DNA of 63,894 bases, counting the filler, from Octopus bimaculoides (Eukaryota), in NCBI RefSeq assembly GCF_001194135.2. It is 6 parts of 6 records of this genome, joined end to end, with 100 filler letters (N's around TTAATTAATTAA, not from the genome) between each part and the next. Parts side by side here need not be neighbours in the genome. Positions count along the whole stretch, not along the records: positions 1 to 11,764 come from NW_026335580.1; 5 more parts are not named here. One strand, written 5' to 3'. The notes beneath the pieces were generated by a model. The model saw nothing but the letters and a program-made list of their open reading frames with translations, was not told where the DNA came from and made no database searches. Position numbers and translations under genes: made by a program. Shown one piece after another: positions 1 through 11,764 of this stretch. How positions within the stretch are numbered: position 1 is the first letter of the stretch; the number at the start of each line of letters is the position of its first letter.

Positions 1-37
<37 letters not shown>

Positions 38-1716
38 TCGTCTAAAAAATCTATAGACTGCGGTTATTCTAGGGACCGCCTTTGATGGGTTTAGTCGAAG
101 AAATTGACCCCAGTACTTGTAAGTCTGGTACCTCTTATATCAGTCTCTTTTACAAAATTGCTACGTGGACGTAAACTAACCAACACTAATCCTCAAACGA
201 TGGTGAGGACAAACACAATCACACTCTAACAGACGATGGGCTTCCACAGTTTCCAGTTACCAAATTCATTCACAAAGCATTAGTTGACCCGGGGCTATAG
301 TAGACGGCACTTGCCCACAGTGGGACTGAACCCAAAACCACGACGTCACAAAGCGAGTTTCTAAACGACACAGCTATGCCTCCGCCTGTAGAACAATATG
401 GAACGCTTCACGAATTTGTTTGTCATTATTACACAAATGGATGTGATTTTTAATATGTTCACTTTGCAGCCACGTGTCTTCGAGGTAAGTCCCTGAGCGG
501 ACACCTTTTACTAAGTGTCTTCTACAATAATCTTGAATCAACCAAAGCTTCGTGAAAGAAATTTCATAAACGGTAACTGGATAGAAGCTCACTATACTTA
601 ACGTGTGTATCTATGTGAGCGTATGCACGAATGTGTTACCGTGATTTCGTTTGTTCGCTTATACAGACTAATCTTAAGATTCGACAAGTAAAGATCAATA
701 AAATTAAGTACCAGTCTTAAAAACAAGTAGAGTACTCGGTATAATCAACTAAGTTCTTGGAGGCAGTGCTCCAGAATGACCATGGTCCAGCGGTTGAAAT
801 TGGTTGAAGTATACACACACATATTTCTTATATACAGTGTAATTTTATCTGATTTATCTTCAGTTTCCTAAAATTAGAAGTTTAGTAATGCACATTCACC
901 CTCCCTCCGATACCCTACGTATTTATCACCTGAAAAGTAAGAATTATTTATTCTCTTCAAAGTATAGTATTCTTGAAAAAGGAAAAAAAAACATTTATCG
1001 TCAGTACATTTATATATAATACAAAGATATTCCGAGTGTCTATATCGATATGTACGTACGTATTTGATACGCTGTACGTATTTTAAAAAAAACAAAAAAA
1101 AACTACGTTTGTCAACTCACCTTTTTAATTAGGTCTATATTAAACAGCTAGTTAAACTATCTCGTCTAATTAGATCGTTTTCACACAATTTCCTAACCAA
1201 ATCATCTGTATTTCAATGGTAGTTAGATCCAGAATTAGGTAGACAGTAACATAACGGGAAGAAGAAAAAAAAAAAAAACCACACGGCTTGGAATGCCACT
1301 TGCGAGGTTTAACCACACTCCATAACAACAGCTCTAGTGTCCAATAGGAATGTGAACAACGTGAATTCCACTTACTCTAATTCAAACTACATTCAGTCGA
1401 GAATGAAACAATAAATGAATAGTTTGTGAAAGTGTTGTGCTTAAACAGCGTATCGGCAGGTGACAAGCTGCCGGACAGCATTATACTACGAGAAGTGGAC
1501 ACGGGAGAGAGAGATCCAAGTTGTAGTTGGTTCGGGGTACGCAGTCTAACAACCGCCTTCTTTTCTCATGATTCTCTGTTACACACCAGTTCATTTACCA
1601 CAAGATATGATCGCACTTAATATTCAACAGTGTGTGTGAACGGGTGGGGAGAAATAACTTAATATTTGATTATCGATAGCATGATTACTTGTAAATATGT
1701 GACGCAAAGTTTAGAG

Positions 1717-2045
1717 CAGGGGTTCTCAACAATTTTTTGCCCATCGACCCCTCCGATTCCGATTTTACTCGAATGAACCCTCATAACCATTCGTTGTTTT
1801 AAAAATCCTGTTAAATTTTTATAATTAAATATTATCTGGAATTGTATAAAAATAATTAAAACGTTTTGTGTATTATGGACATATTACCTATTTATATAGC
1901 ATAAACTTTACTCGTCAGGAACACCATTCTTTCATGGCTGCTGAAAATTTACTGTGGACCCCTAATTTACTATATTGTATCTATGGACGCTCATAAATCT
2001 TATATGAACCCTAAGGGTCCATGTGGACCCCGTTGAGAACCCCTG
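1717..2045. mobile_element. hAT MITE with perfect TIRs and 8-bp TSD
   Basis: TIR caggggttctcaac / gttgagaacccctg. TSD gtttagag at 1709-1716 and 2046-2053. Confidence 0.92.
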
Positions 2046-2529
2046 GTTTAGAGAAAGACACTTTTATTGTTTAGCTCATGGTCAGCCCTGTTGAAGAAAA
2101 GCTTTGATTAAAAGCATTCCGACCAGGACTATCTCTTCTCAGTGCAGACATAGTGCAATTTGAATTACAATTTCAATTGCCACCTTGATTTTTTTGTAAA
2201 GATTGAATGGTTTGAACTGGAGATTTCGTTGTCGCTTGCAAGAGATCAAACGAGAACATATATTCTTTGTTAGCTCAAGGTAGATACAATATCAACGTTG
2301 TATGAAGCTGAGAGGTTTGTACAACGAATAGGTTAGATAGAAACAAAAGTATAAACCAAACATACAGTTCCTGTAATGTTATTGTTACTATTTCCAGCTG
2401 TTTGTTTTCAGGGTTTTTGCACTTCTTGTTAGGGATATGTTTTCGAAATTGAAAAATCTTATTCGAAATGGTCTTTTAGAATAATCTAGGATTCTTTAAT
2501 TCTGCCCAAAGTAAACAGATGTTTTAACC

Positions 2530-2846
2530 CAGTGGTTTTCAATCGGGGTTCAAATATAATTTTTGAGGGTCCATGTGACAAAATAGTAAATTGGGGATCC
2601 CTGAAAAATTTTTGCTTTCGACGTATATATTGGTATGTATTGCAATAAACAGCTAGGTTTCTTTCTCTAACATTTTACATAGTTCAACCTTTAATACAAG
2701 TTAATGCATGAAAAACAAAATAGAAATTTTGAAAGAAGATTCTATAAAACTAGCTTTTTAAACATCGAATAGTTATGGGATTCCACACGAAAAAAAAAAA
2801 TGGTAACCAAAGGGGTCTATAGATATAAAATGGTTGAGAACCCCTG
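2530..2846. mobile_element. hAT MITE (related family)
   Basis: cagtggttttcaatc / ggttgagaacccctg ends. The 8-bp flanks match imperfectly. Confidence 0.7.
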
Positions 2847-3987
2847 TTTAAAACAAAAAGATATTTCAAGTTTGAGATGTATGTTTGATATGGATGATTA
2901 AAGAGTGTGTTTGAAGTTGCTGGCATTGTTTCGCTCCAGAGCAACTCTGACCAAGCTGACTTATGATCAAAGACATTCTTTGACCATCCTGTCTTTTTAA
3001 GCATATCGAGGAATACATTCTTTGTGTTCTTTTTTGGAGATTTGACTTCTACGTAGAAGCACCTTTGTTGGCTAGTATGTGAGACCATGCCAATTCGCTG
3101 CATCCATCTGCGATTTTCATTTTTCTTTTCCTTTGTTTCCCCCCCCCCCCAGTAACGTTTAGTCAGGGGAGGATGAGCAGTATGAGTGACATTTTCTTTT
3201 CAGGACTTCCGAGACTGATGGGAGGAAAATATATTAAAAACGGGAGACTTGAACTGAATGCTTACAGCAAATTGAACTCCAAGGGACCAGCTAGTGATGT
3301 TAAACCAAGCGATAGATGTACATATATACCCGGTTTCTATTACATTCCGCTTACATTGTTTGTGCTCTAATACTTAAATAATATCAAATCCAATATGGTA
3401 TTTAAAAGTTCTAATAAAAAAATGTGAAATAATCATATGTAGACAAAAAAGAGTTGTAGTGTTGAAACAAAATTCCCATTAGTGTCATTTCATCATTTAC
3501 GCTGCTATTGGTGTATTAATTGCTATTTCTAGCATATCCAGCTAAGGTGTAGAGCAGACATGGACAACATTTCTCGAGAAGCGACCTGCATGAGACATGG
3601 CTCATCATCACACGGGCTGCTTTACGAAAAAGGTTCAAGGTAATTTTTTGTTACGCATGCCATTCAGAAAGTCCCACAGTTTGCTTGCGACTAGTGTACA
3701 CTCTCTTTTGTTGATTCATATTTGTTTACGTGATTTTCTTAATATTCTATGTATGCAAAAAGATACTTTTTTACTTTTAAAAACAATATATGAAAAGTAG
3801 AAGTCTGACATTAGGTTAAGGGTAGGTCGTATGTCTTATAGACAGAATCCAGACCAACTTATGTCAAATGAATTGTGTAATGAAAGTGTTTTGTTGAGGA
3901 CAGAAAAATTGATTCAAGGATTCGTTAAAAACGTCAATTATCTTGATTGGAACAATTGAAAACAAAGTTACTGACACTTTTTACTTT

Positions 3988-4020
<33 letters not shown>

Positions 4021-4940
4021 TAGGCACAAGGCTTGAAATTTTGTGATGAGGGGCTAGTCGATTAGGATCTTTCTGATTTGACGGGCGCCACTTGTTTTCT
4101 TAACGAAACATTTTCAAACTTGGGACATTGGTAGAGTGTGTCATATAAAACATCTTTTACTCTTAGTGTTATTGAGAAAATTTTATCTTTTTAAAGTTAT
4201 TTCGTGTTAAAATTGTCGTATTTCGGTACCCCATCCCTTAGTGCTCAACTGGTACTTATTTTATGAAAGGCAAAGTCGATCTTGGCGGCATTTGAACTCA
4301 GAACACAAGAGGCTGGAAGAAATGCTGCTAAGCATTTTATCCGGATCAGTAACGATTCTGGCCGCTTATCGCCTTTAAAGCTGCTGATACAATAAGAACA
4401 GAACGAGTAAATAACAAAATGTGAGTCACCTATATATTTATATATTTCCTCAGATTTCCCAAATCCGGAAGACGCTTCTTTAATTAGATTGGTGTGTCCA
4501 TTAATCGCTTGACATATCACACATAGCAAAGTAAAATCGCAAGAACTTAGAAGCTTAGATGAAGAACATGCCTTTGCATATGTATATATGGGTGAAGCCA
4601 GGACTTAAGGTGGGGGTTTCCCCAGTTATTAAAATGGATTTAATATTAACTGTCAAAAATATGTGAGAAAAAAAAACAAAAAAACCCCACAAAATTAAAA
4701 TAAATGTTAGATAATAATTTTCATTAGTATGACACTACCGGGGATGGAGGGATTCTTGTGAATCTATCCACCCTCCTCTGGTCACGTCTGTAATGTGTGT
4801 GTGTGGTCTAATTGTAAGGATATTGCACTCACGATCGCAAGATTACGGTTTCGATTCCCAAACTGGCGGTGCGCTGTGTTCATGAGCAAAACAATTCATT
4901 TTATGCAGCACCAGTCCACTCAGCCGATAGTCTGGTATAC

Positions 4941-4976
<36 letters not shown>

Positions 4977-5682
4977 GAGTGCGCGCGTACACACACACAC
5001 ACATGATTGACTGGCTAAAAAGCTCGCTTCGGAATCACGAGATGCCAGTTCCACTACCACTGTGCACAACACCTTTGGAAAGGGCCTGAAACAATCCAGG
5101 ACTTATGAGTGAAATTATATAAACGAAAACTGTGTCGAAGCCAGTCAGATGGGCCGGTATATGTCATTCGCAGCGTCGCTCTAGTCACTCAGTGTGCCAC
5201 ACTGATTCTACCAGAAGATTCGTTTAAGTTACTGAGGAACTATCGGTCAACTTTACACTACAATAGATGATGGACGGTACTCGTAATTCAAACGACCGGC
5301 TTCGTGTGTGTGTGTGGCTGGTCGTTTGAGTTACGAGTACAGTCCATATAATGCATTTAAACTGATTCTACCTGATGATTACATTACCCCTTTGGCTGTC
5401 CAAAGCATTTTCATAAGTTTGTCCTAAACACCCCTGCTTATATTCGGACGTTTAGTTAGCCCTTGTTTTATATGTTTTATAAAGCTTTCTTTTCATAAGT
5501 CCAAAGTTAATCTAGAGGCTGAAGAAAAAAAAAGGCGTGGGGGGATGGATACCAGGAAAACAGGATAGGCAAAAGGCTCTGAAGAGTATCTATGACATAT
5601 TCAGCTATTTATAGTATATATACAGTAAATAACCCGGAAATCACGATACACATATATTGTTTTGAGCTGAATGGGGGGGGGG

Positions 5683-6030
5683 GTGCTAGATTCCCTTGTT
5701 CGAAAACATAAGGACACGTCGTGTCGTATAGCCAGCTGGAGACGATGTCTCCTGGGACTAAATTACAGCAACATTCGTCCCAAATCAGGACTGCCATGTT
5801 ATGTTGGCAAACAATCTTTACTACAATCTTTGCTGAATATCTCACGCCGTGAGATTTAAAAATAGTAATTTTCTTATTTACAGTATAGTCCAAAGCGTAG
5901 GTAGCGTCGTTGATCGAATAAACAGCAAGATACATTCATGAACAGGAGAATCCAGCACACATGCAATTTTATATTTGAAGAGTTAGTCATGAACCAGAAC
6001 CCACTCATCAAATAAAGTATGCCGGACGGT
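5683..6030 (+). mobile_element. Circularly permuted ~350-nt retrozyme-like monomer with degenerate HHR (copy 2)
   Basis: ggacac-gtc-gtgtc ... gccagctggagacgatgtctcctgggactaaa is homologous to 62371-62424. gtgctagattcccttgttc (5683) pairs with gaacaggagaatccagcac (5940). Decayed core TTGAAGA (5975-5981) ... GAAC (5997-6000). Confidence 0.6.
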
Positions 6031-6329
6031 GTTATACAATGAAAATAATTATTTATATCAAACTGATTCATGACAAACAGCAAAATGTTTAATAATTCTT
6101 TTGCACTTTAAATTTAAAACAAAAGTTCTTATCTTCAAATATTTTACCTCAAAATGTCTTTCTAGAACTTCATCTTGAGTTAATCATTATATATTCAACC
6201 ATCCGTTATAAATTATCATTTGTCTGAAAAAAAGCAAAGGAGCAAAACATTTGGCAGACTCTCATGAACCATTTTAATAAATAATAAATATGGATGTGTA
6301 TGCATATCTGTGAGTGTGTGTGTGTGTGT

Positions 6330-6640
6330 AGCATCACAGGGGCCAGTTGGCAGAAGGCCATCAAGTTGGTTATGGAGATAGCAGAGGTTACCTCAAGGTG
6401 GCAAGGGATCAAAATGTGCGGGCCAAATGTTCCATATCCCGTCTAGAGTAAGGACAATGTACTGCAAAAGCTTGGGATTCAAAGGTCCATAGCTATTTAA
6501 TATCTTGCCAAAAAACCTGAGAGATCTACATGGAATGGGAGAAGATGTTTTCATGAAGCACCTTGACCCTCCCAGAAGGCAAGAAACTCAAATTAGAGCA
6601 GCAGTATCAAACTCTCTTATTCACCCATAACCAACTACAT
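6330..6640 (+). mobile_element. Decayed CR1/L2-type LINE 3' end
   Basis: Translates as SRVRTMYCKSLGFKGP*LFNILPKNLRDLHG..F.KHLD...RAAVSNSLIH, the typical post-RT C-terminus. Contains stops. Confidence 0.7.
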
Positions 6641-8085
6641 AGGAATAACTATTGAAAAGGTGATGATACTGGAGGTGATCCAGTATGGCTACAGCCTTTA
6701 GGCTGGAACACAAAAGAATACAAGAATAAAAGAATATATTTTCAGGACACACACTTCTATTTGTTAGCAGTCGTAGCAGTAAAATGAATGTTTCTTTATA
6801 AAAGTTTCTTTACAATCTAAAAGATCGTAAAAGAATTCTCGATACTTACATAGATATGTGTGTACGTGTATGTGTGTGTGTTATCTTGGTATGTTATAGC
6901 AATGTGTTTGTATATGCTGATACCCCAGTACTCTTTACATTTTATTAACCACTTTCCCCCCAGTTATTTGTGAACTGTTCCTTCCACTTCAGCTCAATAT
7001 TTGTTAAAGAAGACATGCCTGATGAACACACAATACGACGTTTTCAATAAGGGATACATTTATAGAATACCGGGAGAGGGAGGGGGCGTCGAGTACGTGT
7101 TTATCTATACATGCGCGTGTATGTTTGTGTACATGTCATACCCTTTAGTTTCTTGTAGTCTTCACATTTAAGGCTATGCCAGAGTATGCGTTCCTGTCTG
7201 ATATGATTCCCACCGGGCTTCATTTTCACCTTCACAGAGAGAGAGGGGGGAGAGGAAGATAGAGAGTAAGTGTCCATTAATCCAGTGTCCAATAGACTGG
7301 CAGACCCAGCTAAATGGTAGGAGCTTATAGGGATTTTCAGTGTTTAGCTAAGCTGAGAATACCAAACGTTCCTATGAAAAGGACACTAGTTTCTCGTATG
7401 GGTAACCCACAGGTGTCAATGGGCTATATAGATTTCAAATTTTGGCACAAGGCCAGCAAGTTCAGGGGAGAGGTCTAGTCGATCACATCGATCTCAGTAC
7501 TCAACTGGTACTCATTTCATCGACCCCGAAAGGATGAAAGAAAAAGTCGATCTCGGCGGATTTTGAACTCAGAACGTAAAGACGGACGAAATGCCGCTAA
7601 ATATTTTACCCGGCGCGCCGACGATTCTACCAGCTCGCCGCCTTGCCACTGAGCCATATTGATGTAATTTTTTTGTTTGGGATACACGCACTGCATTGAC
7701 GAAGAAAATCCATTCTAAAGTTTCTTACTCCTTTGTTCAGTTTCTTTACATAGGCGCGGGGTTTTCTGTGTGATTAAGAAGTTTGCTTTGTAACCACGTA
7801 GTTTCAAGGCGGTGCTCCAGTATGACCACAGCCCATTGACTGAAACAAGTAAAAGAGAAAAAGTACCCAAACACACAATCGCGCGCACTGACACGCCCAC
7901 ATGTACGTGGAAAATAGTTTCCCTGCAAACTAAATCGATTTCTTGACGTCCCTAATTAATGCTTTTAAGCCTACCAATTATTCTTGCATTTAATTTGCAT
8001 GTGGCTATTTATGTATATATATGTATGCGCGTGTGTGTGTGTACGGCAGTGTTTATTTATGCATGCACGTATGTGTGAATGTGTG

Positions 8086-8125
<40 letters not shown>

Positions 8126-9000
8126 NNNNNNNNNNNNNNNNNNNNNNNNNNNNNNNNNNNNNNNNNNNNNNNNNNNNNNNNNNNNNNNNNNNNNNNNNNN
8201 NNNNNNNNNNNNNNNNNNNNNNNNNNNNNNNNNNNNNNNNNNNNNNNNNNNNNNNNNNNNNNNNNNNNNNNNNNNNNNNNNNNNNNNNNNNNNNNNNNNN
8301 NNNNNNNNNNNNNNNNNNNNNNNNNNNNNNNNNNNNNNNNNNNNNNNNNNNNNNNNNNNNNNNNNNNNNNNNNNNNNNNNNNNNNNNNNNNNNNNNNNNN
8401 NNNNNNNNNNNNNNNNNNNNNNNNNNNNNNNNNNNNNNNNNNNNNNNNNNNNNNNNNNNNNNNNNNNNNNNNNNNNNNNNNNNNNNNNNNNNNNNNNNNN
8501 NNNNNNNNNNNNNNNNNNNNNNNNNNNNNNNNNNNNNNNNNNNNNNNNNNNNNNNNNNNNNNNNNNNNNNNNNNNNNNNNNNNNNNNNNNNNNNNNNNNN
8601 NNNNNNNNNNNNNNNNNNNNNNNNNNNNNNNNNNNNNNNNNNNNNNNNNNNNNNNNNNNNNNNNNNNNNNNNNNNNNNNNNNNNNNNNNNNNNNNNNNNN
8701 NNNNNNNNNNNNNNNNNNNNNNNNNNNNNNNNNNNNNNNNNNNNNNNNNNNNNNNNNNNNNNNNNNNNNNNNNNNNNNNNNNNNNNNNNNNNNNNNNNNN
8801 NNNNNNNNNNNNNNNNNNNNNNNNNNNNNNNNNNNNNNNNNNNNNNNNNNNNNNNNNNNNNNNNNNNNNNNNNNNNNNNNNNNNNNNNNNNNNNNNNNNN
8901 NNNNNNNNNNNNNNNNNNNNNNNNNNNNNNNNNNNNNNNNNNNNNNNNNNNNNNNNNNNNNNNNNNNNNNNNNNNNNNNNNNNNNNNNNNNNNNNNTATA

Positions 9001-9360
9001 TATTTCTAATTTTGCTGATCAGTGAATGAACTTCACTATGATTTACATAAGTCTGTGAAGGAGAAACAGGCCTCTCTATCCAGCTGGCAAGCTACTTCAG
9101 GCTGATGACGAGCAAAGACTCAGAAACATGTCCCTGAATGCTGGCTAGGCTGGGTGGGGGAGCTTGTCTCCCCTTCACAAACTTAAGGACACAGTAATTG
9201 TGTCAAGGCCGACAGGAAGTGGTCCAGCTTCCTAGGGCTAAACGGCAGTAGTGTATTCCCTTATTGGGATTGTCACATTAAGTTGACAATATACTACAAC
9301 TTTGTCGCTCCACTACTGCTTAAATCTCTCTGAGAGATTTAGAAATATTATATTTCTAAT
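9001..9360 (+). mobile_element. Full-length 350-nt retrozyme-like monomer
   Basis: tatttctaat occurs at 9001 and again at 9351 (period 350). A long rod (9050-9070 pairs with about 9163-9183) carries the HHR at its apex, followed by hairpins gacaca/tgtgtc, aggaag/cttcct, a GGGCTAAA motif and aaatctctc/gagagattt. Confidence 0.7.
9096..9138 (+). ncRNA. Type I hammerhead ribozyme motif (retrozyme-like unit, copy 1)
   Basis: Stem I ttcagg(9096-9101)/cctgaa(9133-9138); core CTGATGA 9102-9108; stem II gag/ctc with one unpaired base on each side; GAAA 9123-9126; palindromic stem III ACATGT; GUC site, predicted cleavage after 9132. Confidence 0.75.
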
Positions 9361-10289
9361 ATATATATATATAAATAAATGGCAGTGCCCCAACATGGCC
9401 ACAGCTCATGAGCTGAAACTAGATAAATAAAATAAAATGAAAAATTTTATCGTTTATCTTTTACTTGTTTCAGTCATTAGTCTGGTAAAAAGCATCTAAA
9501 TTCAGGGCACAAATACAGATTTTCATAGATTAACATGTAGTCCAAAACCAAGAAATTGTAAGAAAAATTAATATTTTTAAAAACTTAGCTTAACCCTTTG
9601 AGGGTAGTGTAGTGAGCTGTAGTATGGTAGAAAGACTAATTTCATTATAGTACATGAATTAGTCCTATCGTATTCTGAAATTAATTCCGGAATCCTACTT
9701 TTTTTATTATTATTCATTATAGCATTAAGATGGCGAGTCGGCAAAATGCTTAGCAGCATCTCTTCTGGCTTAACGTTCTGAGTTCAAATGCCTTTCATCC
9801 TTTCGGAGTTGATGAAATAAATACTAGTTGAATACTGGAGTCGATATAATCGACTAGCCCTTCCCGAAAATTGTCACGCCTTGTGCCTATAAAAGAAAAT
9901 ATTATTGGTGCTACTTTGGTGTGTGATCTACAACTTAAAGGACGATTACTTTAGGTTACTTTTTAATTTACTTTTCAATTTCTAAAAGCCCTTAAGATGG
10001 CTAAAGATTTTTTGCAATAAATTCTTTTGTACATACTTAGTACTGTAAATGAAGTTTTCAAAATTTTTACTATTTTAATAATAATAAAACCATGTCTCAT
10101 TTATGTCTTAGTAAATAATAATAAGAAACCAAGAATAAACAATATAATAATTAAAATAAGCACGTAGATCACACAAGTTTGGCAGCTGCGAGTTTTGCAA
10201 CGTAAAGAAACTAAAAACTAACCTAAAGTAATCGCCCTTGAAGTTGTAGATCATACGCCAAAGTAGCACCAAATTATTTGTAGCATAGT

Positions 10290-11135
10290 GACTTGGCAGA
10301 ATCGTTAGCGTGTCGGGAAAATGCTTTGCATTATTAGTTCCGACTCTCTACATTTTAAGTTCAAATCCCAACAAGGTCAACTGCGCTTTCCCTCGTTTTG
10401 GGTGTCGATAAAATGAAGTTCCAGCCATGCACTAGGGTTACTGGTATCAACAAACTTCATCCCCTCAAAATTGCTGGCTTTCCGTCAAAATCAAAACAAA
10501 GGTGGTAAGTTGGTAGAATCGTTAGCATGCCTGACAAAATGCTTAGCAGCATTTTTCTTTTATTGCTTCGGGGTCGATAAAATGAGAACCAGTTGAGCAC
10601 TGGGTTCGGTGTAATCGACTCATGCCCTTCCCCGAAATCGCTGGTCTTGTGCCAAAATTTAAAACCATTATTATTATGATTATTACTAGGAAAGCGGTGA
10701 ACTAGCAGAACCGTTAGCACGTTTAGTGGTATTTTGCCTGCCGCTACGTTCTGAGTTGAAACTCCGCCGAGGTCGACTTTGCTTTTACATCCTTTCGGGG
10801 TCAATAAATTAAGCACCAGTTGCGTACTGAGGTCGATCTAATCGACTGGCACCCCCCCCCCCAAATTTCAGGCCTTGTGCCTATAATAGAAAGGATTATC
10901 ATCATTATTATTATTATTATTCAGAAAGCGGTTAGTTGGCAGAATCATTAGCATACCGGACTAAATGCTTAGCGGTATTTCGTCCGCCTTTACATTCTGA
11001 GTTCAAATCCGCCGACGTCGACTTTGCCTTTTATCTTTTCAAGACAATAAACTAAGTACTAATTGCATACTGGAATCGACGTAATCTATTTACTTGTACA
11101 CCAAAAATTGCTGGCTTAATGCCAAAATTTGAAAC
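10290..11135 (+). mobile_element. Cluster of four head-to-tail SINE family A copies (ggcagaatcgttagc...gttcaaat...gtcgactttgcctttcatcc...(ATT)n)
   Basis: tRNA-like head with B-box-like gagttcaaat, shared body and (ATT)n tails. Other copies: + 9725-9900, 15490-15880, 38380-38530, 55020-55215, 57075-57270; - 4020-4375, 7430-7645, 45775-45960. Confidence 0.85.
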
Positions 11136-11764
11136 CATTATTACCATTAAGTTGATGAAATATATACCGGTGGAAAACGAGAAGTTCATAAGACTACAAC
11201 TATCTTCCTGTCTAATCAACAGAAATCAATATTTCATTCTATTCTAGTAATATGAGATATAAGTGCATGTTCTATAGTCATTGCAATAGGTGAATGTAAA
11301 ACAAAAAAAATTAAAAACAAACGTTATAACAGGCTACACAACAAACAATACGACAGCCGTTACAAGTTTTCACAACAGACAATACAATGACAATGGTCAT
11401 TACAACCGTTGTTACAACAGTTGGAAACAACAATCATGATAACAGACATTACCTAATTTTGGATGTCCTCCTCCGTCCACAAACGGTCTGCTCCCGAGCC
11501 CGTCTCGTTTTGTTATGTTTTGGTCCCATTACTAGCAACTTTCTTGCCAGTGCCTCCAGAGTGGAAGCAATATTACCGATAATGGCCGAAATTGCGTTTG
11601 ACACTCTGGCCGATAACTGATAAGGAGTTGGTGACCTGTGTTTTCTGTTCGCCTCTGTATTTAGTATATGTTCGTTCGTTTATTTCACGACATGTTTTTT
11701 GTGAATTATATATATATACGATGAAAGTAAACAAACAAAGTTTGTTCTTTTTTAGAAGCGTTGA

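What the first reader, a model, noticed from the sequence alone, without database searches (positions are those of the whole stretch)
9001..9360. Complete 350-nt hammerhead retrozyme-like monomer, probably the last unit of a tandem array hidden in the gap
Seen: an intact type I HHR (9096-9138) at the tip of a long rod (9050-9070 with about 9163-9183), then a series of hairpins; terminal redundancy tatttctaat at 9001 and 9351 gives a period of exactly 350 nt; an 872-N gap lies immediately upstream. Known: metazoan non-LTR retrozymes are tandem units of a few hundred nt, each with a type I HHR, that self-cleave into monomers, circularise and are thought to be mobilised by Penelope RT. Minimal HHRs with a palindromic stem III (here ACAUGU) can cleave as dimers. 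Inference: this is a cephalopod retrozyme able to yield a 350-nt circRNA.
Basis: partly seen in the sequence, partly recalled or inferred. Interest (0 to 1): 0.9.

Follow-up and report, generated by a model that had tools for sequence, protein, structure and literature searches.

The report
Hammerhead-ribozyme tandem repeat (retrozyme) unit
This 350-base stretch is one unit of a very abundant (about 10,000-25,000 copies) head-to-tail repeat family that carries a classical animal-type self-cutting hammerhead RNA motif, i.e. an ordinary "retrozyme"-type mobile repeat of a kind already known from mussels, corals and salamanders, here with one unusual mismatch in the ribozyme and no direct proof yet that it cuts or forms RNA circles.

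Summary
Window 9096-9138 (+) has every invariant hammerhead core base, a 6-bp helix I, a 4-position helix II, a palindromic ACAUGU helix III and C17 at 9132. It sits at the tip of a long rod (9048-9092 with 9140-9185). The 350-nt unit folds far better than shuffles (z -7.2). A 12-mer recurs exactly 350 nt apart. Rfam reports no hammerhead, but a covariance model built from 16 Rfam-accepted type I hammerheads hits exactly 9096-9138 (33.9 bits, E 8e-9). The family has roughly 1-2.5x10^4 copies per genome. Its ribozyme core is almost invariant. In DNA contigs the unit start is nearly always preceded by a unit end, and RNA reads cross the same 350-nt junction. This fits a metazoan non-LTR retrozyme, a new member of a known kind. 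Not shown: self-cleavage, circular RNA, mobilisation by Penelope-like elements, or further units in the 871-N gap. No read ends pile up at 9132/9133 and RNA levels are low. One deviation is family-wide: a C-A mismatch replaces the conserved G10.1-C11.1 pair, so the ribozyme may be weak. Interest is modest.

The parts
8999..9010 (+). First copy of the 12-nt junction word TATATTTCTAAT (start of the unit)
   Evidence: Identical to 9349-9360 at an offset of exactly 350. RNA joint 9348->8999 has 12 letters that fit both sides.
9001..9350 (+). The register is arbitrary for a tandem or circular element.
   Evidence: Fold of -133 kcal/mol, z -7.17. G+C 43.4%. No reading frame longer than 48 codons. 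Word depth is 10^4-fold above single copy.
9048..9092 (+). 5' arm of the long rod that extends helix I
   Evidence: The minimum-free-energy fold pairs 9048-9092 with 9140-9185. The main subfamily's different 5' arm (overhang consensus before 9091) still pairs with its 3' arm (checked by hand).
9093..9095 (+). UAC bulge ('loop 1') on the 5' side of helix I. U9139 is its 3' counterpart.
   Evidence: Same UAC + 6 bp + core spacing and a 3' U after helix I as in the metagenome type I hammerheads accepted by Rfam. In those, UAC was fixed by the search pattern; the 3' U was not.
9096..9101 (+). Helix I, 5' strand (UUCAGG)
   Evidence: Six Watson-Crick pairs with 9133-9138.
9102..9108 (+). Core box CUGAUGA (C3-A9)
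   Evidence: Read from the sequence. Invariant in the family.
9109..9122 (+). Helix II (CGAG/CUCA) with loop 2 CAAAGA. Its base pair 10.1-11.1 is C9109-A9122, a mismatch.
   Evidence: Flagged as the only non-standard pair by the model alignment. No variant at or above 2% at 9109 or 9122 in three DNA runs.
9123..9125 (+). Core G12 A13 A14
   Evidence: Read from the sequence; model alignment.
9126..9131 (+). Helix III ACAUGU: A15.1-U16.1 plus a palindrome that cannot close on itself but can pair with a second copy
   Evidence: Read from the sequence. It is one pair shorter than the ACNNNNGU of the 16 reference hammerheads. The dimer logic is from PMC4209133 and PMC7229834.
9132..9132 (+). C17. 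The predicted self-cleavage is between 9132 and 9133.
   Evidence: Position in the model alignment. No experimental or read-end support.
9133..9138 (+). Helix I, 3' strand (CCUGAA)
   Evidence: Its two common family variants, 9133 C>T (23-28%) and 9137 A>G (18-24%), both keep the pair as G-U.
9140..9185 (+). 3' arm of the rod
9188..9339 (+). Branched right half: hairpins 9188-9204, 9207-9239, 9244-9320 (with two inner hairpins) and 9323-9339
   Evidence: Blocks 9192-9230, 9257-9295 and 9322-9347 are depth maxima, meaning they are conserved among copies.
9349..9360 (+). Second copy of the 12-nt word: the first 12 nt of a next unit, or a target-site duplication
   Evidence: Family homology stops at 9360, where depth falls about 20-fold at 9361.
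9359..9377 (.). (AT)n microsatellite forming the right flank
   Evidence: Tandem Repeats Finder. Right flanks of other copies are also AT-rich (overhang behind 9360).
8126..8996 (.). Assembly gap of 871 N, with (TG)27 at 8072-8125 on its left
   Evidence: Its content is unknown.

Best explanation
The segment is one complete unit (plus 12 nt of the next) of a high-copy, non-coding, head-to-tail repeat family of the metazoan 'non-LTR retrozyme' type. Each unit encodes, on the + strand only, a canonical animal type I hammerhead at the tip of a rod-and-branches fold.

Proposed working, with each step marked as shown or inferred:
1. Arrays are transcribed into multimeric RNA. Shown only in that RNA reads span the unit-unit junction.
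2. Helix III is a bare palindrome (ACAUGU), so a single ribozyme is unstable. Two ribozymes of neighbouring units pair through it into a double hammerhead and cut after C9132. This would release 350-nt monomers with 5'-OH and 2',3'-cyclic phosphate ends. Inferred from anatomy and from published behaviour of such hammerheads.
3. A host RtcB-type tRNA ligase closes the monomers into 350-nt circles. Inferred from PMC7229834.
4. The reverse transcriptase-endonuclease of co-resident Penelope-like elements copies the RNA, possibly around the circle, giving tandem cDNA. It inserts the copy at AT-rich or (TA)n sites. Inferred; the (AT)n flank here fits.

The family-wide C10.1-A11.1 mismatch predicts a slow ribozyme, or one that needs a helper.
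For: **Motif**
- All invariant core bases and the three helices are at 9096-9138.
- The model R1, built from 16 Rfam-accepted type I hammerheads, scores it 33.9 bits, E 7.9e-9. It is the only significant hit on either strand.
- The loop architecture (UAC bulge, 6-bp helix I, 4+6+4 helix II with loop CAAAGA, 3' U) matches those references.

**Family**
- Summed word depth is 0.4-1.0 million, against 34 (X1) and 62 (X3) for the single-copy flank 9597-9700. That gives about 1-2.5x10^4 copies.
- The core 9096-9132 has a single variant at or above 2% (9116 A>T, 5-7%), while the rest of the unit varies about every 5 nt.
- Helix I variants are G-U compatible.

**Tandem arrangement**
- Overhangs in front of 8998-9003 read ...GAGAGATTTAGAAATAT, which is the unit's 3' end.
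- One DNA contig joins 9359->9012.
- RNA reads 'go back 350' (13 reads), which accounts for essentially all RNA coverage of the unit start.

**Other retrozyme traits**
- G+C is 43%. There is no ORF over 48 codons and no protein relatives. z is -7.2.
- No Penelope-type or other protein domain was found in the >=70-codon ORFs of the piece.

**Literature**
- Mussel retrozymes are 350-390 bp with about 5000 hammerheads (PMC7229834).
- Octopus genomes hold active Penelope elements (PMC13282606).
- Penelope-like elements prefer AT-rich or microsatellite targets, form tandems and break short-read assemblies (PMC8557442, PMC11167929).
Against: - Rfam's own hammerhead models give no hit at E<=10.
- The highly conserved G10.1-C11.1 pair is replaced by C-A in the whole family, which may cripple catalysis.
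- In three raw RNA-seq runs only 286-352 of about 12 million sampled reads map. They map in both read orientations, coverage tracks DNA copy number, and no molecule ends accumulate at 9132/9133.
- Junction reads are equally explained by read-through of tandem DNA.
- No sequence link to a Penelope-like element could be tested.
- At this locus only one unit is visible.
Confidence: 0.75

Rival explanations
1. It is a hammerhead-bearing satellite or relic. The family is a tandem repeat that descends from a retrozyme, but its ribozyme is catalytically dead or nearly so because of the C10.1-A11.1 mismatch. The family now spreads, or merely persists, at the DNA level through unequal crossing-over or segmental duplication, or is copied by a Penelope-like element without any RNA cleavage or circle.
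For: - The C-A mismatch at the most conserved helix II pair is family-wide.
- Rfam does not call the motif.
- There are no read ends at the cleavage site, and RNA is low and in both read orientations.
- For a lizard Penelope element, hammerhead mutants did not affect insertion in vitro, and no RNA-seq ends were found at the cut site (PMC11167929).
Against: - The core is far more uniform than the rest of the unit across about 10^4 copies, and helix I variants keep pairing. This points to selection on the ribozyme at each round of copying.
- About 1000 copies are at least 95% identical in the 5' region, so amplification was recent.
- Axolotl retrozyme hammerheads with a U-U mismatch at the same place still cleave as dimers (PMC7229834).
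Confidence: 0.17
2. At this particular locus the element is a solitary, SINE-like retro-insertion of 1.03 units into a (TA)n microsatellite. The 12-nt repeat would be a target-site duplication or a 'more-than-unit' tail, and the gap would hide only microsatellite, not an array.
For: - The three bases at the gap edge are TAT, not the ATT expected from a preceding unit. They continue the (TA) pattern seen on the right flank.
- The gap's left edge is (TG)27, which by itself can break a short-read assembly.
- Monomeric copies are common in some retrozyme families (bioRxiv 10.64898/2026.07.22.740005).
Against: - In 9 of 10 contigs at least 95% identical to this copy, the unit start is preceded by a unit end.
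- Junction variants differing by one base (…GAAATATA|ATATTTC, …GAAATA|ATATATTTC) exist, so TAT could be such a variant.
- Tandem arrays are a classic cause of gaps.
Confidence: 0.3
3. It is the terminal repeat (pseudo-LTR) of an autonomous Penelope-like element whose coding part lies in the gap.
For: Penelope-like elements carry hammerheads in their terminal repeats, form partial tandems and disrupt assemblies (PMC4209133, PMC8557442).
Against: - An 871-N gap is too small for a 2.5-3 kb RT-endonuclease ORF, if the gap size is roughly right.
- Overhangs in front of the unit are unit ends, not coding sequence.
- The hammerhead is of the canonical retrozyme type (4-position helix II, UAC/CAAAGA loops). 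It is not the 'minimal' Penelope type with a long helix II and no loop contacts (PMC4209133).
- No RT or GIY-YIG domain was found in the >=70-codon ORFs of the piece.
Confidence: 0.04
4. It is a chance resemblance to a hammerhead inside an unrelated repeat.
For: Rfam is negative.
Against: - E is 7.9e-9 with an independent model, matching full length at the exact coordinates.
- The core is invariant across about 10^4 copies.
- The loop architecture matches the references, and the motif sits at the tip of a rod in a tandem unit of typical retrozyme size.
Confidence: 0.01

Closest known systems
Non-LTR retrozymes of the mussel Mytilus galloprovincialis (Cervera & de la Pena 2020, PMC7229834)
   Same: Both are described as mollusc repeats (the host here is not verified). 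Both are tandem repeats of 350-390 bp, with thousands of type I hammerheads per genome. Both are non-coding, low in G+C, strongly self-paired, and carry a ribozyme in one polarity only.
   Different: The mussel hammerheads lack most of the loop 1/loop 2 contact bases, whereas this one keeps the UAC / CAAAGA arrangement. The mussel RNAs are proven abundant circles and cleave in vitro; here neither is shown. There is no sequence similarity beyond the core.
Axolotl and newt satellite hammerheads (HHR_Amex1 / HHR_Amex2; PMC7229834)
   Same: Unit size is 330-350 nt. Helix III is reduced to one pair plus a palindromic loop, so cleavage needs a dimer. Amex2 has a mismatch (U-U) at the base of helix II, as here (C-A). 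Copy numbers are very high.
   Different: The host is a vertebrate. The mismatch is a different one. Activity as dimers was demonstrated there, not here.
Canonical type I hammerhead, Rfam RF00163 (Schistosoma Sm-alpha / coral type)
   Same: The 13 core bases, 6-bp helix I, 4-position helix II with a 6-nt CAAANA loop, palindromic helix III, cleavage after C17, and a UAC bulge 5' of helix I.
   Different: C-A replaces G10.1-C11.1. Helix III is one pair shorter. The motif falls below Rfam's reporting threshold, whereas the reference sequences score 35-51 bits.
Minimal hammerheads in the terminal repeats of Penelope-like elements (PMC4209133)
   Same: A hammerhead tied to a retroelement that forms head-to-tail tandems and inserts in AT-rich or microsatellite DNA. 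Dimer-dependent helix III. Probably the same mobilising enzyme.
   Different: Those have a long helix II (6-8 bp), a short helix I, a bulged base between positions 9 and 10.1, no loop contacts, and flank an RT-endonuclease ORF. None of this applies here.

Membership tests
Hammerhead ribozyme, type I | Invariant core: C3 U4 G5 A6 N7 G8 A9, G12 A13 A14, A15.1-U16.1, H17 | tested here: met
   CUGAUGA at 9102-9108, GAA at 9123-9125, A9126/U9131, C9132.
Hammerhead ribozyme, type I | Three helices around the core, with helix I open-ended (type I topology) | tested here: met
   Helix I is 6 bp, helix II is 3 standard pairs plus 1 mismatch, and helix III is a palindrome. The match covers the model full length.
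Hammerhead ribozyme, type I | Conserved G10.1-C11.1 pair at the base of helix II | tested here: not met
   C9109 opposite A9122. No variant at or above 2% at either position in DNA of three runs.
Hammerhead ribozyme, type I | Reaches the curated Rfam score (RF00163, 34 bits) or any Rfam hammerhead model | tested here: not met
   No hammerhead family listed at E<=10 in 1-11764 or in 8997-9400. Control sequences score 35-51 bits.
Hammerhead ribozyme, type I | Significant match to a structure-plus-sequence model of accepted members | tested here: met
   Model R1 gives 33.9 bits, E 7.9e-9. Caveat: the training sequences were fetched with a pattern that fixed TAC, CTGATGA, CAAANA and GAAAC.
Hammerhead ribozyme, type I | Self-cleavage 3' of position 17 | not testable with these tools
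   Indirect evidence only: no accumulation of read ends at 9132/9133 in three RNA runs.
Metazoan non-LTR retrozyme | Head-to-tail tandem units of about 150-450 bp, each with one type I hammerhead | tested here: met
   Met for the family: unit-end overhangs lie before the unit start, a DNA joint runs 9359->9012, and the period is 350. For this locus the result is inconclusive, because only one unit plus 12 nt lies beside a gap.
Metazoan non-LTR retrozyme | Non-coding, G+C below about 45%, highly self-paired RNA | tested here: met
   G+C is 43.4%. The longest open frame is 48 codons and there are no protein relatives. z is -7.17.
Metazoan non-LTR retrozyme | Transcribed and accumulating as unit-length circular RNA | tested here: inconclusive
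   Junction-spanning RNA reads exist (13 reads), but the same junction is in DNA. Overall RNA is low (about 300 of 12 million sampled reads). The libraries may be poly(A)-selected.
Metazoan non-LTR retrozyme | No LTRs, primer-binding site or polypurine tract | not tested
   The unit is a single 350-nt repeat with no internal long direct repeat. PBS and PPT were not searched for.
Metazoan non-LTR retrozyme | Co-residence with, and sequence relation to, Penelope-like elements | not testable with these tools
   No eukaryotic genome collection was available. The literature reports active Penelope elements in Octopus vulgaris (PMC13282606). No PLE domain was found in the >=70-codon ORFs of the piece.
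Penelope-like element terminal repeat (pLTR) with minimal hammerhead | Flanks an RT + GIY-YIG ORF; hammerhead with long helix II, bulge between positions 9 and 10.1, and no helix III | tested here: not met
   No such ORF. The helix II and loop architecture is of the canonical type.
tRNA-derived SINE | tRNA-like head with internal pol III promoter; dispersed single copies with target duplications | tested here: not met
   ARAGORN finds no tRNA-like sequence. Copies are predominantly head to tail.

The most novel reading that the evidence does not exclude
The family-wide C10.1-A11.1 mismatch might not be decay. It could be a selected variant of the canonical hammerhead, a protonation-, protein- or dimer-gated switch that keeps about 10^4 ribozymes silent until a Penelope protein or a particular cell state is present. 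In that case the resulting rod-like 350-nt RNAs, in an animal lineage reported to edit RNA heavily, would be major double-stranded substrates or sponges for ADAR. One RNA run shows more A>G/T>C positions (12/10) than DNA does (7/5).
Probability: 0.08. Interest if true: 0.65.

Novelty: new member of a known kind. Interest (0 to 1): 0.3.

Why it matters
If the ribozyme is active, this family would extend retrozymes (self-cleaving, circle-forming, Penelope-dependent repeats) to another animal group. Its roughly 10^4 copies would rival axolotl and exceed mussel. It would also supply a natural hammerhead with a C-A mismatch at the metal-binding 10.1/11.1 pair, useful for structure-function work.

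In practical terms, the family marks a class of sequence that breaks short-read assemblies and may be mis-annotated as 'unknown' or 'SINE' in repeat libraries. It does not open a new category or settle a long-standing question.

Tried and rejected
- **Rfam scans.** I ran Rfam on the whole piece and on 8997-9400 at E<=10. No hammerhead or other ribozyme appeared on either strand. The only hits were weak microsatellite-driven miRNA look-alikes.
- **Other copies in the piece.** Sensitive blastn found none.
- **Retrieving real genomic copies through spurious ORF calls.** A 249-aa concatenation of the unit's seven longest open frames gave no hit at E<=0.01 against the 5.8-billion protein collection.
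- **Exact 31-mer of the ribozyme** in metagenome and prokaryote genome collections: 0 matches. A search for the motif strings in the paper library also gave 0.
- **Reading into the gap.** Including Ns in the laid stretch did not help.
- **RNA cofolding of two ribozyme regions.** It gave a swapped-helix structure rather than the double hammerhead (-36.6 against 2 x -16.9 kcal/mol), so it is uninformative. Thermodynamic folding cannot model the core.
- **Proper covariation statistics on the rod.** These were not possible because the read tool returns tables, not sequences. I could only note candidate compensatory pairs: 9056 U>C with 9177 A>G, and 9059 A>G with 9174 U>C.
- **Rejected readings.** Chance motif, tRNA-SINE, and Penelope terminal repeat; the reasons are given under the rival explanations.

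Full report

Yes. Reading 9090-9142 directly gives AGC UAC UUCAGG CUGAUGA CGAG CAAAGA CUCA GAA ACAUGU C CCUGAA U GCU. The parts are:
- Helix I: 9096-9101 with 9133-9138, six Watson-Crick pairs.
- Core box: C3-A9 at 9102-9108.
- Helix II and loop 2: 9109-9122.
- G12 A13 A14: 9123-9125.
- Helix III: a six-base palindrome at 9126-9131, holding A15.1 and U16.1.

The minimum-free-energy fold of 9001-9350 extends helix I into a rod (9048-9092 with 9140-9185). A branched set of hairpins follows (9188-9204, 9207-9239, 9244-9320, 9323-9339). Energy is -133 kcal/mol against -92.6 +/- 5.6 for dinucleotide shuffles, z -7.17.

The word TATATTTCTAAT occurs at 8999-9010 and again at 9349-9360, an offset of exactly 350.

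**2. Is it more than chance, and is it a hammerhead?**

Rfam 15 lists no hammerhead family at E<=10, either over the whole piece or over 8997-9400 alone.

To see why, I fetched sequences with the same outer architecture from metagenome contigs (45 loci). Twelve loci were scanned with Rfam and ten matches in nine of them reached RF00163's gathering score, at 35-51 bits. The printed Rfam consensus is aUccagCUGAcGAGUCCCAAAUAGGACGAAACGcgCGUCcuggAu.

Against that consensus, the window's motif differs in two ways:
- C-A stands in place of the G10.1-C11.1 pair.
- One pair is missing from the palindromic helix III.

I built a covariance model from 16 such sequences with the Rfam structure. It scores 9096-9138 (+) at 33.9 bits, E 7.9e-9, full length. 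The next hit in the piece has E 0.039, and nothing significant lies on the minus strand.

One caveat applies. The training set was retrieved with a pattern that fixed TAC, CTGATGA, CAAANA and GAAAC. The 3' half and all helix complementarity were free.

The motif also shares the UAC bulge 5' of a 6-bp helix I, the single U 3' of it, and a CAAAGA loop 2. One reference, L021, has exactly CAAAGA. From my own recollection, not checked here, these are the positions that make the loop-loop contact in the Schistosoma hammerhead crystal structure.

**3. What is the unit?**

Public sequencing runs of the same (coded) organism show that it is a very abundant repeat.
- Summed word depth over 9093-9356 is 0.4-1.0 million.
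- The single-copy flank 9597-9700 has depth 34 (run X1) and 62 (X3).
- That gives roughly 1-2.5x10^4 copies. This is a rough figure, since it sums contig mean depths.

The first 90 nt (9001-9090) are 10-20 times less deep. Overhang consensus sequences before 9091 are recognisably homologous (…CCAGCTGG…) but diverged. So this is subfamily divergence of the 5' rod arm rather than truncation. About 1000 copies are at least 95% identical to this one there.

Checked by hand, the main subfamily's 5' arm (CAAGCATCTTCAGCCAGC) still pairs with its 3' arm (GCTGGGTGGAGGTGCTTG). The rod is therefore kept although the sequence differs.

The ribozyme is the most uniform part of the unit:
- Between 9096 and 9132 only 9116 A>T (5-7%) exceeds 2%.
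- From 9133 onward a variant at or above 10% occurs about every 5 nt.
- The two frequent helix I variants, 9133 C>T (23-28%) and 9137 A>G (18-24%), both convert a Watson-Crick pair into G-U.
- The C-A at 9109/9122 is not a private mutation of this copy. No alternative base reaches 2%.

Near-identical stretches occur in a second organism label (X14, 0 mismatches over 102 nt) and in RNA of a third (X34).

**4. Tandem or dispersed?**

The evidence points to tandem arrangement for the family.
- DNA contigs that run past the unit's start carry …CTCTGAGAGATTTAGAAATAT in front of 8998-9003. That is the unit's own 3' end (9322-9348).
- At 95% identity or above, 9 of 10 such overhangs are unit ends and one is foreign.
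- One DNA contig joins 9359 to 9012.
- In raw RNA-seq, 13 reads in three runs 'go back 350' from 9348 to 8999, and 3 more join 9359->9012. These account for essentially all coverage of the unit's first bases.
- Overhangs behind 9346/9358 in RNA and DNA resemble diverged unit starts.

Head-to-tail arrays with a 350-nt period are therefore the norm for this family.

For this locus the question stays open. The three bases at the gap edge read TAT where a preceding unit predicts ATT, and (AT)n forms the right flank. Against that, one-base junction variants exist among sister copies, and (TG)27 borders the gap on the left. I put about 0.6-0.7 on further units lying in the gap.

**5. Expression and processing**

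Three raw RNA-seq runs give 286-352 mapped reads out of 11.5-12.9 million sampled. The reads are in both orientations, and their profile mirrors DNA copy number. No place near 9132/9133 shows molecules beginning or ending in excess.

Assembled RNA contigs from older runs contain the family at modest depth, including pieces with 0-1 mismatch to this copy.

This shows transcription across unit junctions. It shows neither cleavage nor circles. If the libraries were poly(A)-selected (selection is not on record), they would under-represent circles. The lizard Penelope study likewise found no RNA-seq ends at its hammerhead site (PMC11167929).

**6. Surroundings**

The piece holds no protein domain in any ORF of 70 codons or more and no tRNA. 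It contains many other repeats. No Penelope-like ORF is present.

The unit ends at 9360 against (AT)n. Other copies' right flanks are also AT-rich. This fits the published target preference of Penelope-like endonucleases, which cleave AT-rich DNA (PMC11167929) and microsatellites such as (TA)n (PMC8557442). The same papers note that such tandem insertions break short-read assemblies.

**7. Mechanism**

Shown:
- A canonical-architecture type I hammerhead in one polarity, at the tip of a rod.
- Tandem genomic units.
- Transcripts spanning junctions.
- An AT-rich insertion flank.

Inferred from the family's published biology (PMC7229834, PMC4209133):
- Hammerheads of adjacent units pair through ACAUGU into a double hammerhead and cut after C9132.
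- The 350-nt product is circularised by a tRNA ligase.
- A Penelope-like RT-endonuclease copies it into new tandem insertions.

The C-A mismatch predicts low intrinsic activity. The nearest precedent is the axolotl Amex2 motif, which has a U-U mismatch at the same position and cleaves poorly alone and better as a dimer (PMC7229834).

**8. Comparison and novelty**

All structural criteria of metazoan non-LTR retrozymes that I could test are met at family level. The functional criteria (cleavage, circular RNA, Penelope dependence) are untested. As a hammerhead it fails two conventional marks: the G10.1-C11.1 pair and the Rfam threshold. It passes the core, topology and model tests.

I found no open paper describing this family or its sequence. 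The 2020 retrozyme paper covers a mussel but does not mention cephalopods.

It is a new member of a known kind. Interest is modest, at 0.3.

Noticed in passing
window 9381-9500: Two fragments of another extremely abundant repeat lie directly downstream, in opposite orientation. Word depth reaches 2.8-3.3 million at 9453-9476, several-fold above the hammerhead family. Other copies continue after about 9478 with GGACTGCGGCCATGCTGGGGCACCGCC, which is the reverse complement of a diverged version of 9381-9405. Related pieces lie at 761-799, 6671-6710 and 7807-7845.
   Followed up: partly
window 9321-9359: A specific transcript contains only the last 39 nt of the unit, followed by AACATTTTTCTGATGTTCTTCGGCGTTTCT. 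There are 55-97 reads per RNA run, with molecules beginning sharply at 9321. The same continuation appears in an RNA contig of a third organism label (X34). It looks like a fragment of the repeat captured in a conserved expressed gene or lncRNA.
   Followed up: no
window 9700-11200: At least four degenerate copies of a roughly 230-nt SINE-like repeat (…GGCAGAATCGTTAGCA…AAATGCTTAGC…TTCTGAGTTCAAAT…GTCGATAAAAT…) lie in the same orientation, separated by ATT or AT-rich runs. ARAGORN sees no tRNA-like head.
   Followed up: no
window 9905-9969 and 10208-10272: A 65-nt inverted repeat, 91% complementary, with 238 nt between the arms. It could be a MITE-like element or an inverted pair of repeat fragments.
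   Followed up: no
window 5269-5348: A near-perfect 31-nt-arm hairpin (90% complementary) with a (TG)n loop. It gives weak, sub-threshold matches to plant and animal miRNA precursor models (35.8 bits against a gathering score of 83), which is probably just a palindromic repeat.
   Followed up: no
window 1709-1766 and 2797-2854 (also 2032-2072 / 2833-2873): 58-nt inverted arms (76% complementary) share GTTGAGAACCCCTG with a direct copy nearby. These may be terminal repeats of a DNA transposon or MITE family.
   Followed up: no
window 8997-9420, RNA run X39: This RNA run shows more A>G and T>C positions over the unit (12 and 10) than the DNA runs (7-8 and 5) or the two sister RNA runs. It could reflect A-to-I editing of the rod-like RNA, or simply a different set of expressed copies.
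   Followed up: no
loci L001-L045 (metagenome contigs): A simple architecture pattern retrieved dozens of canonical type I hammerheads from environmental or host-associated metagenomes. One contig, L016, has two identical ribozymes 980 nt apart. These are likely retrozymes of unsampled animals.
   Followed up: partly
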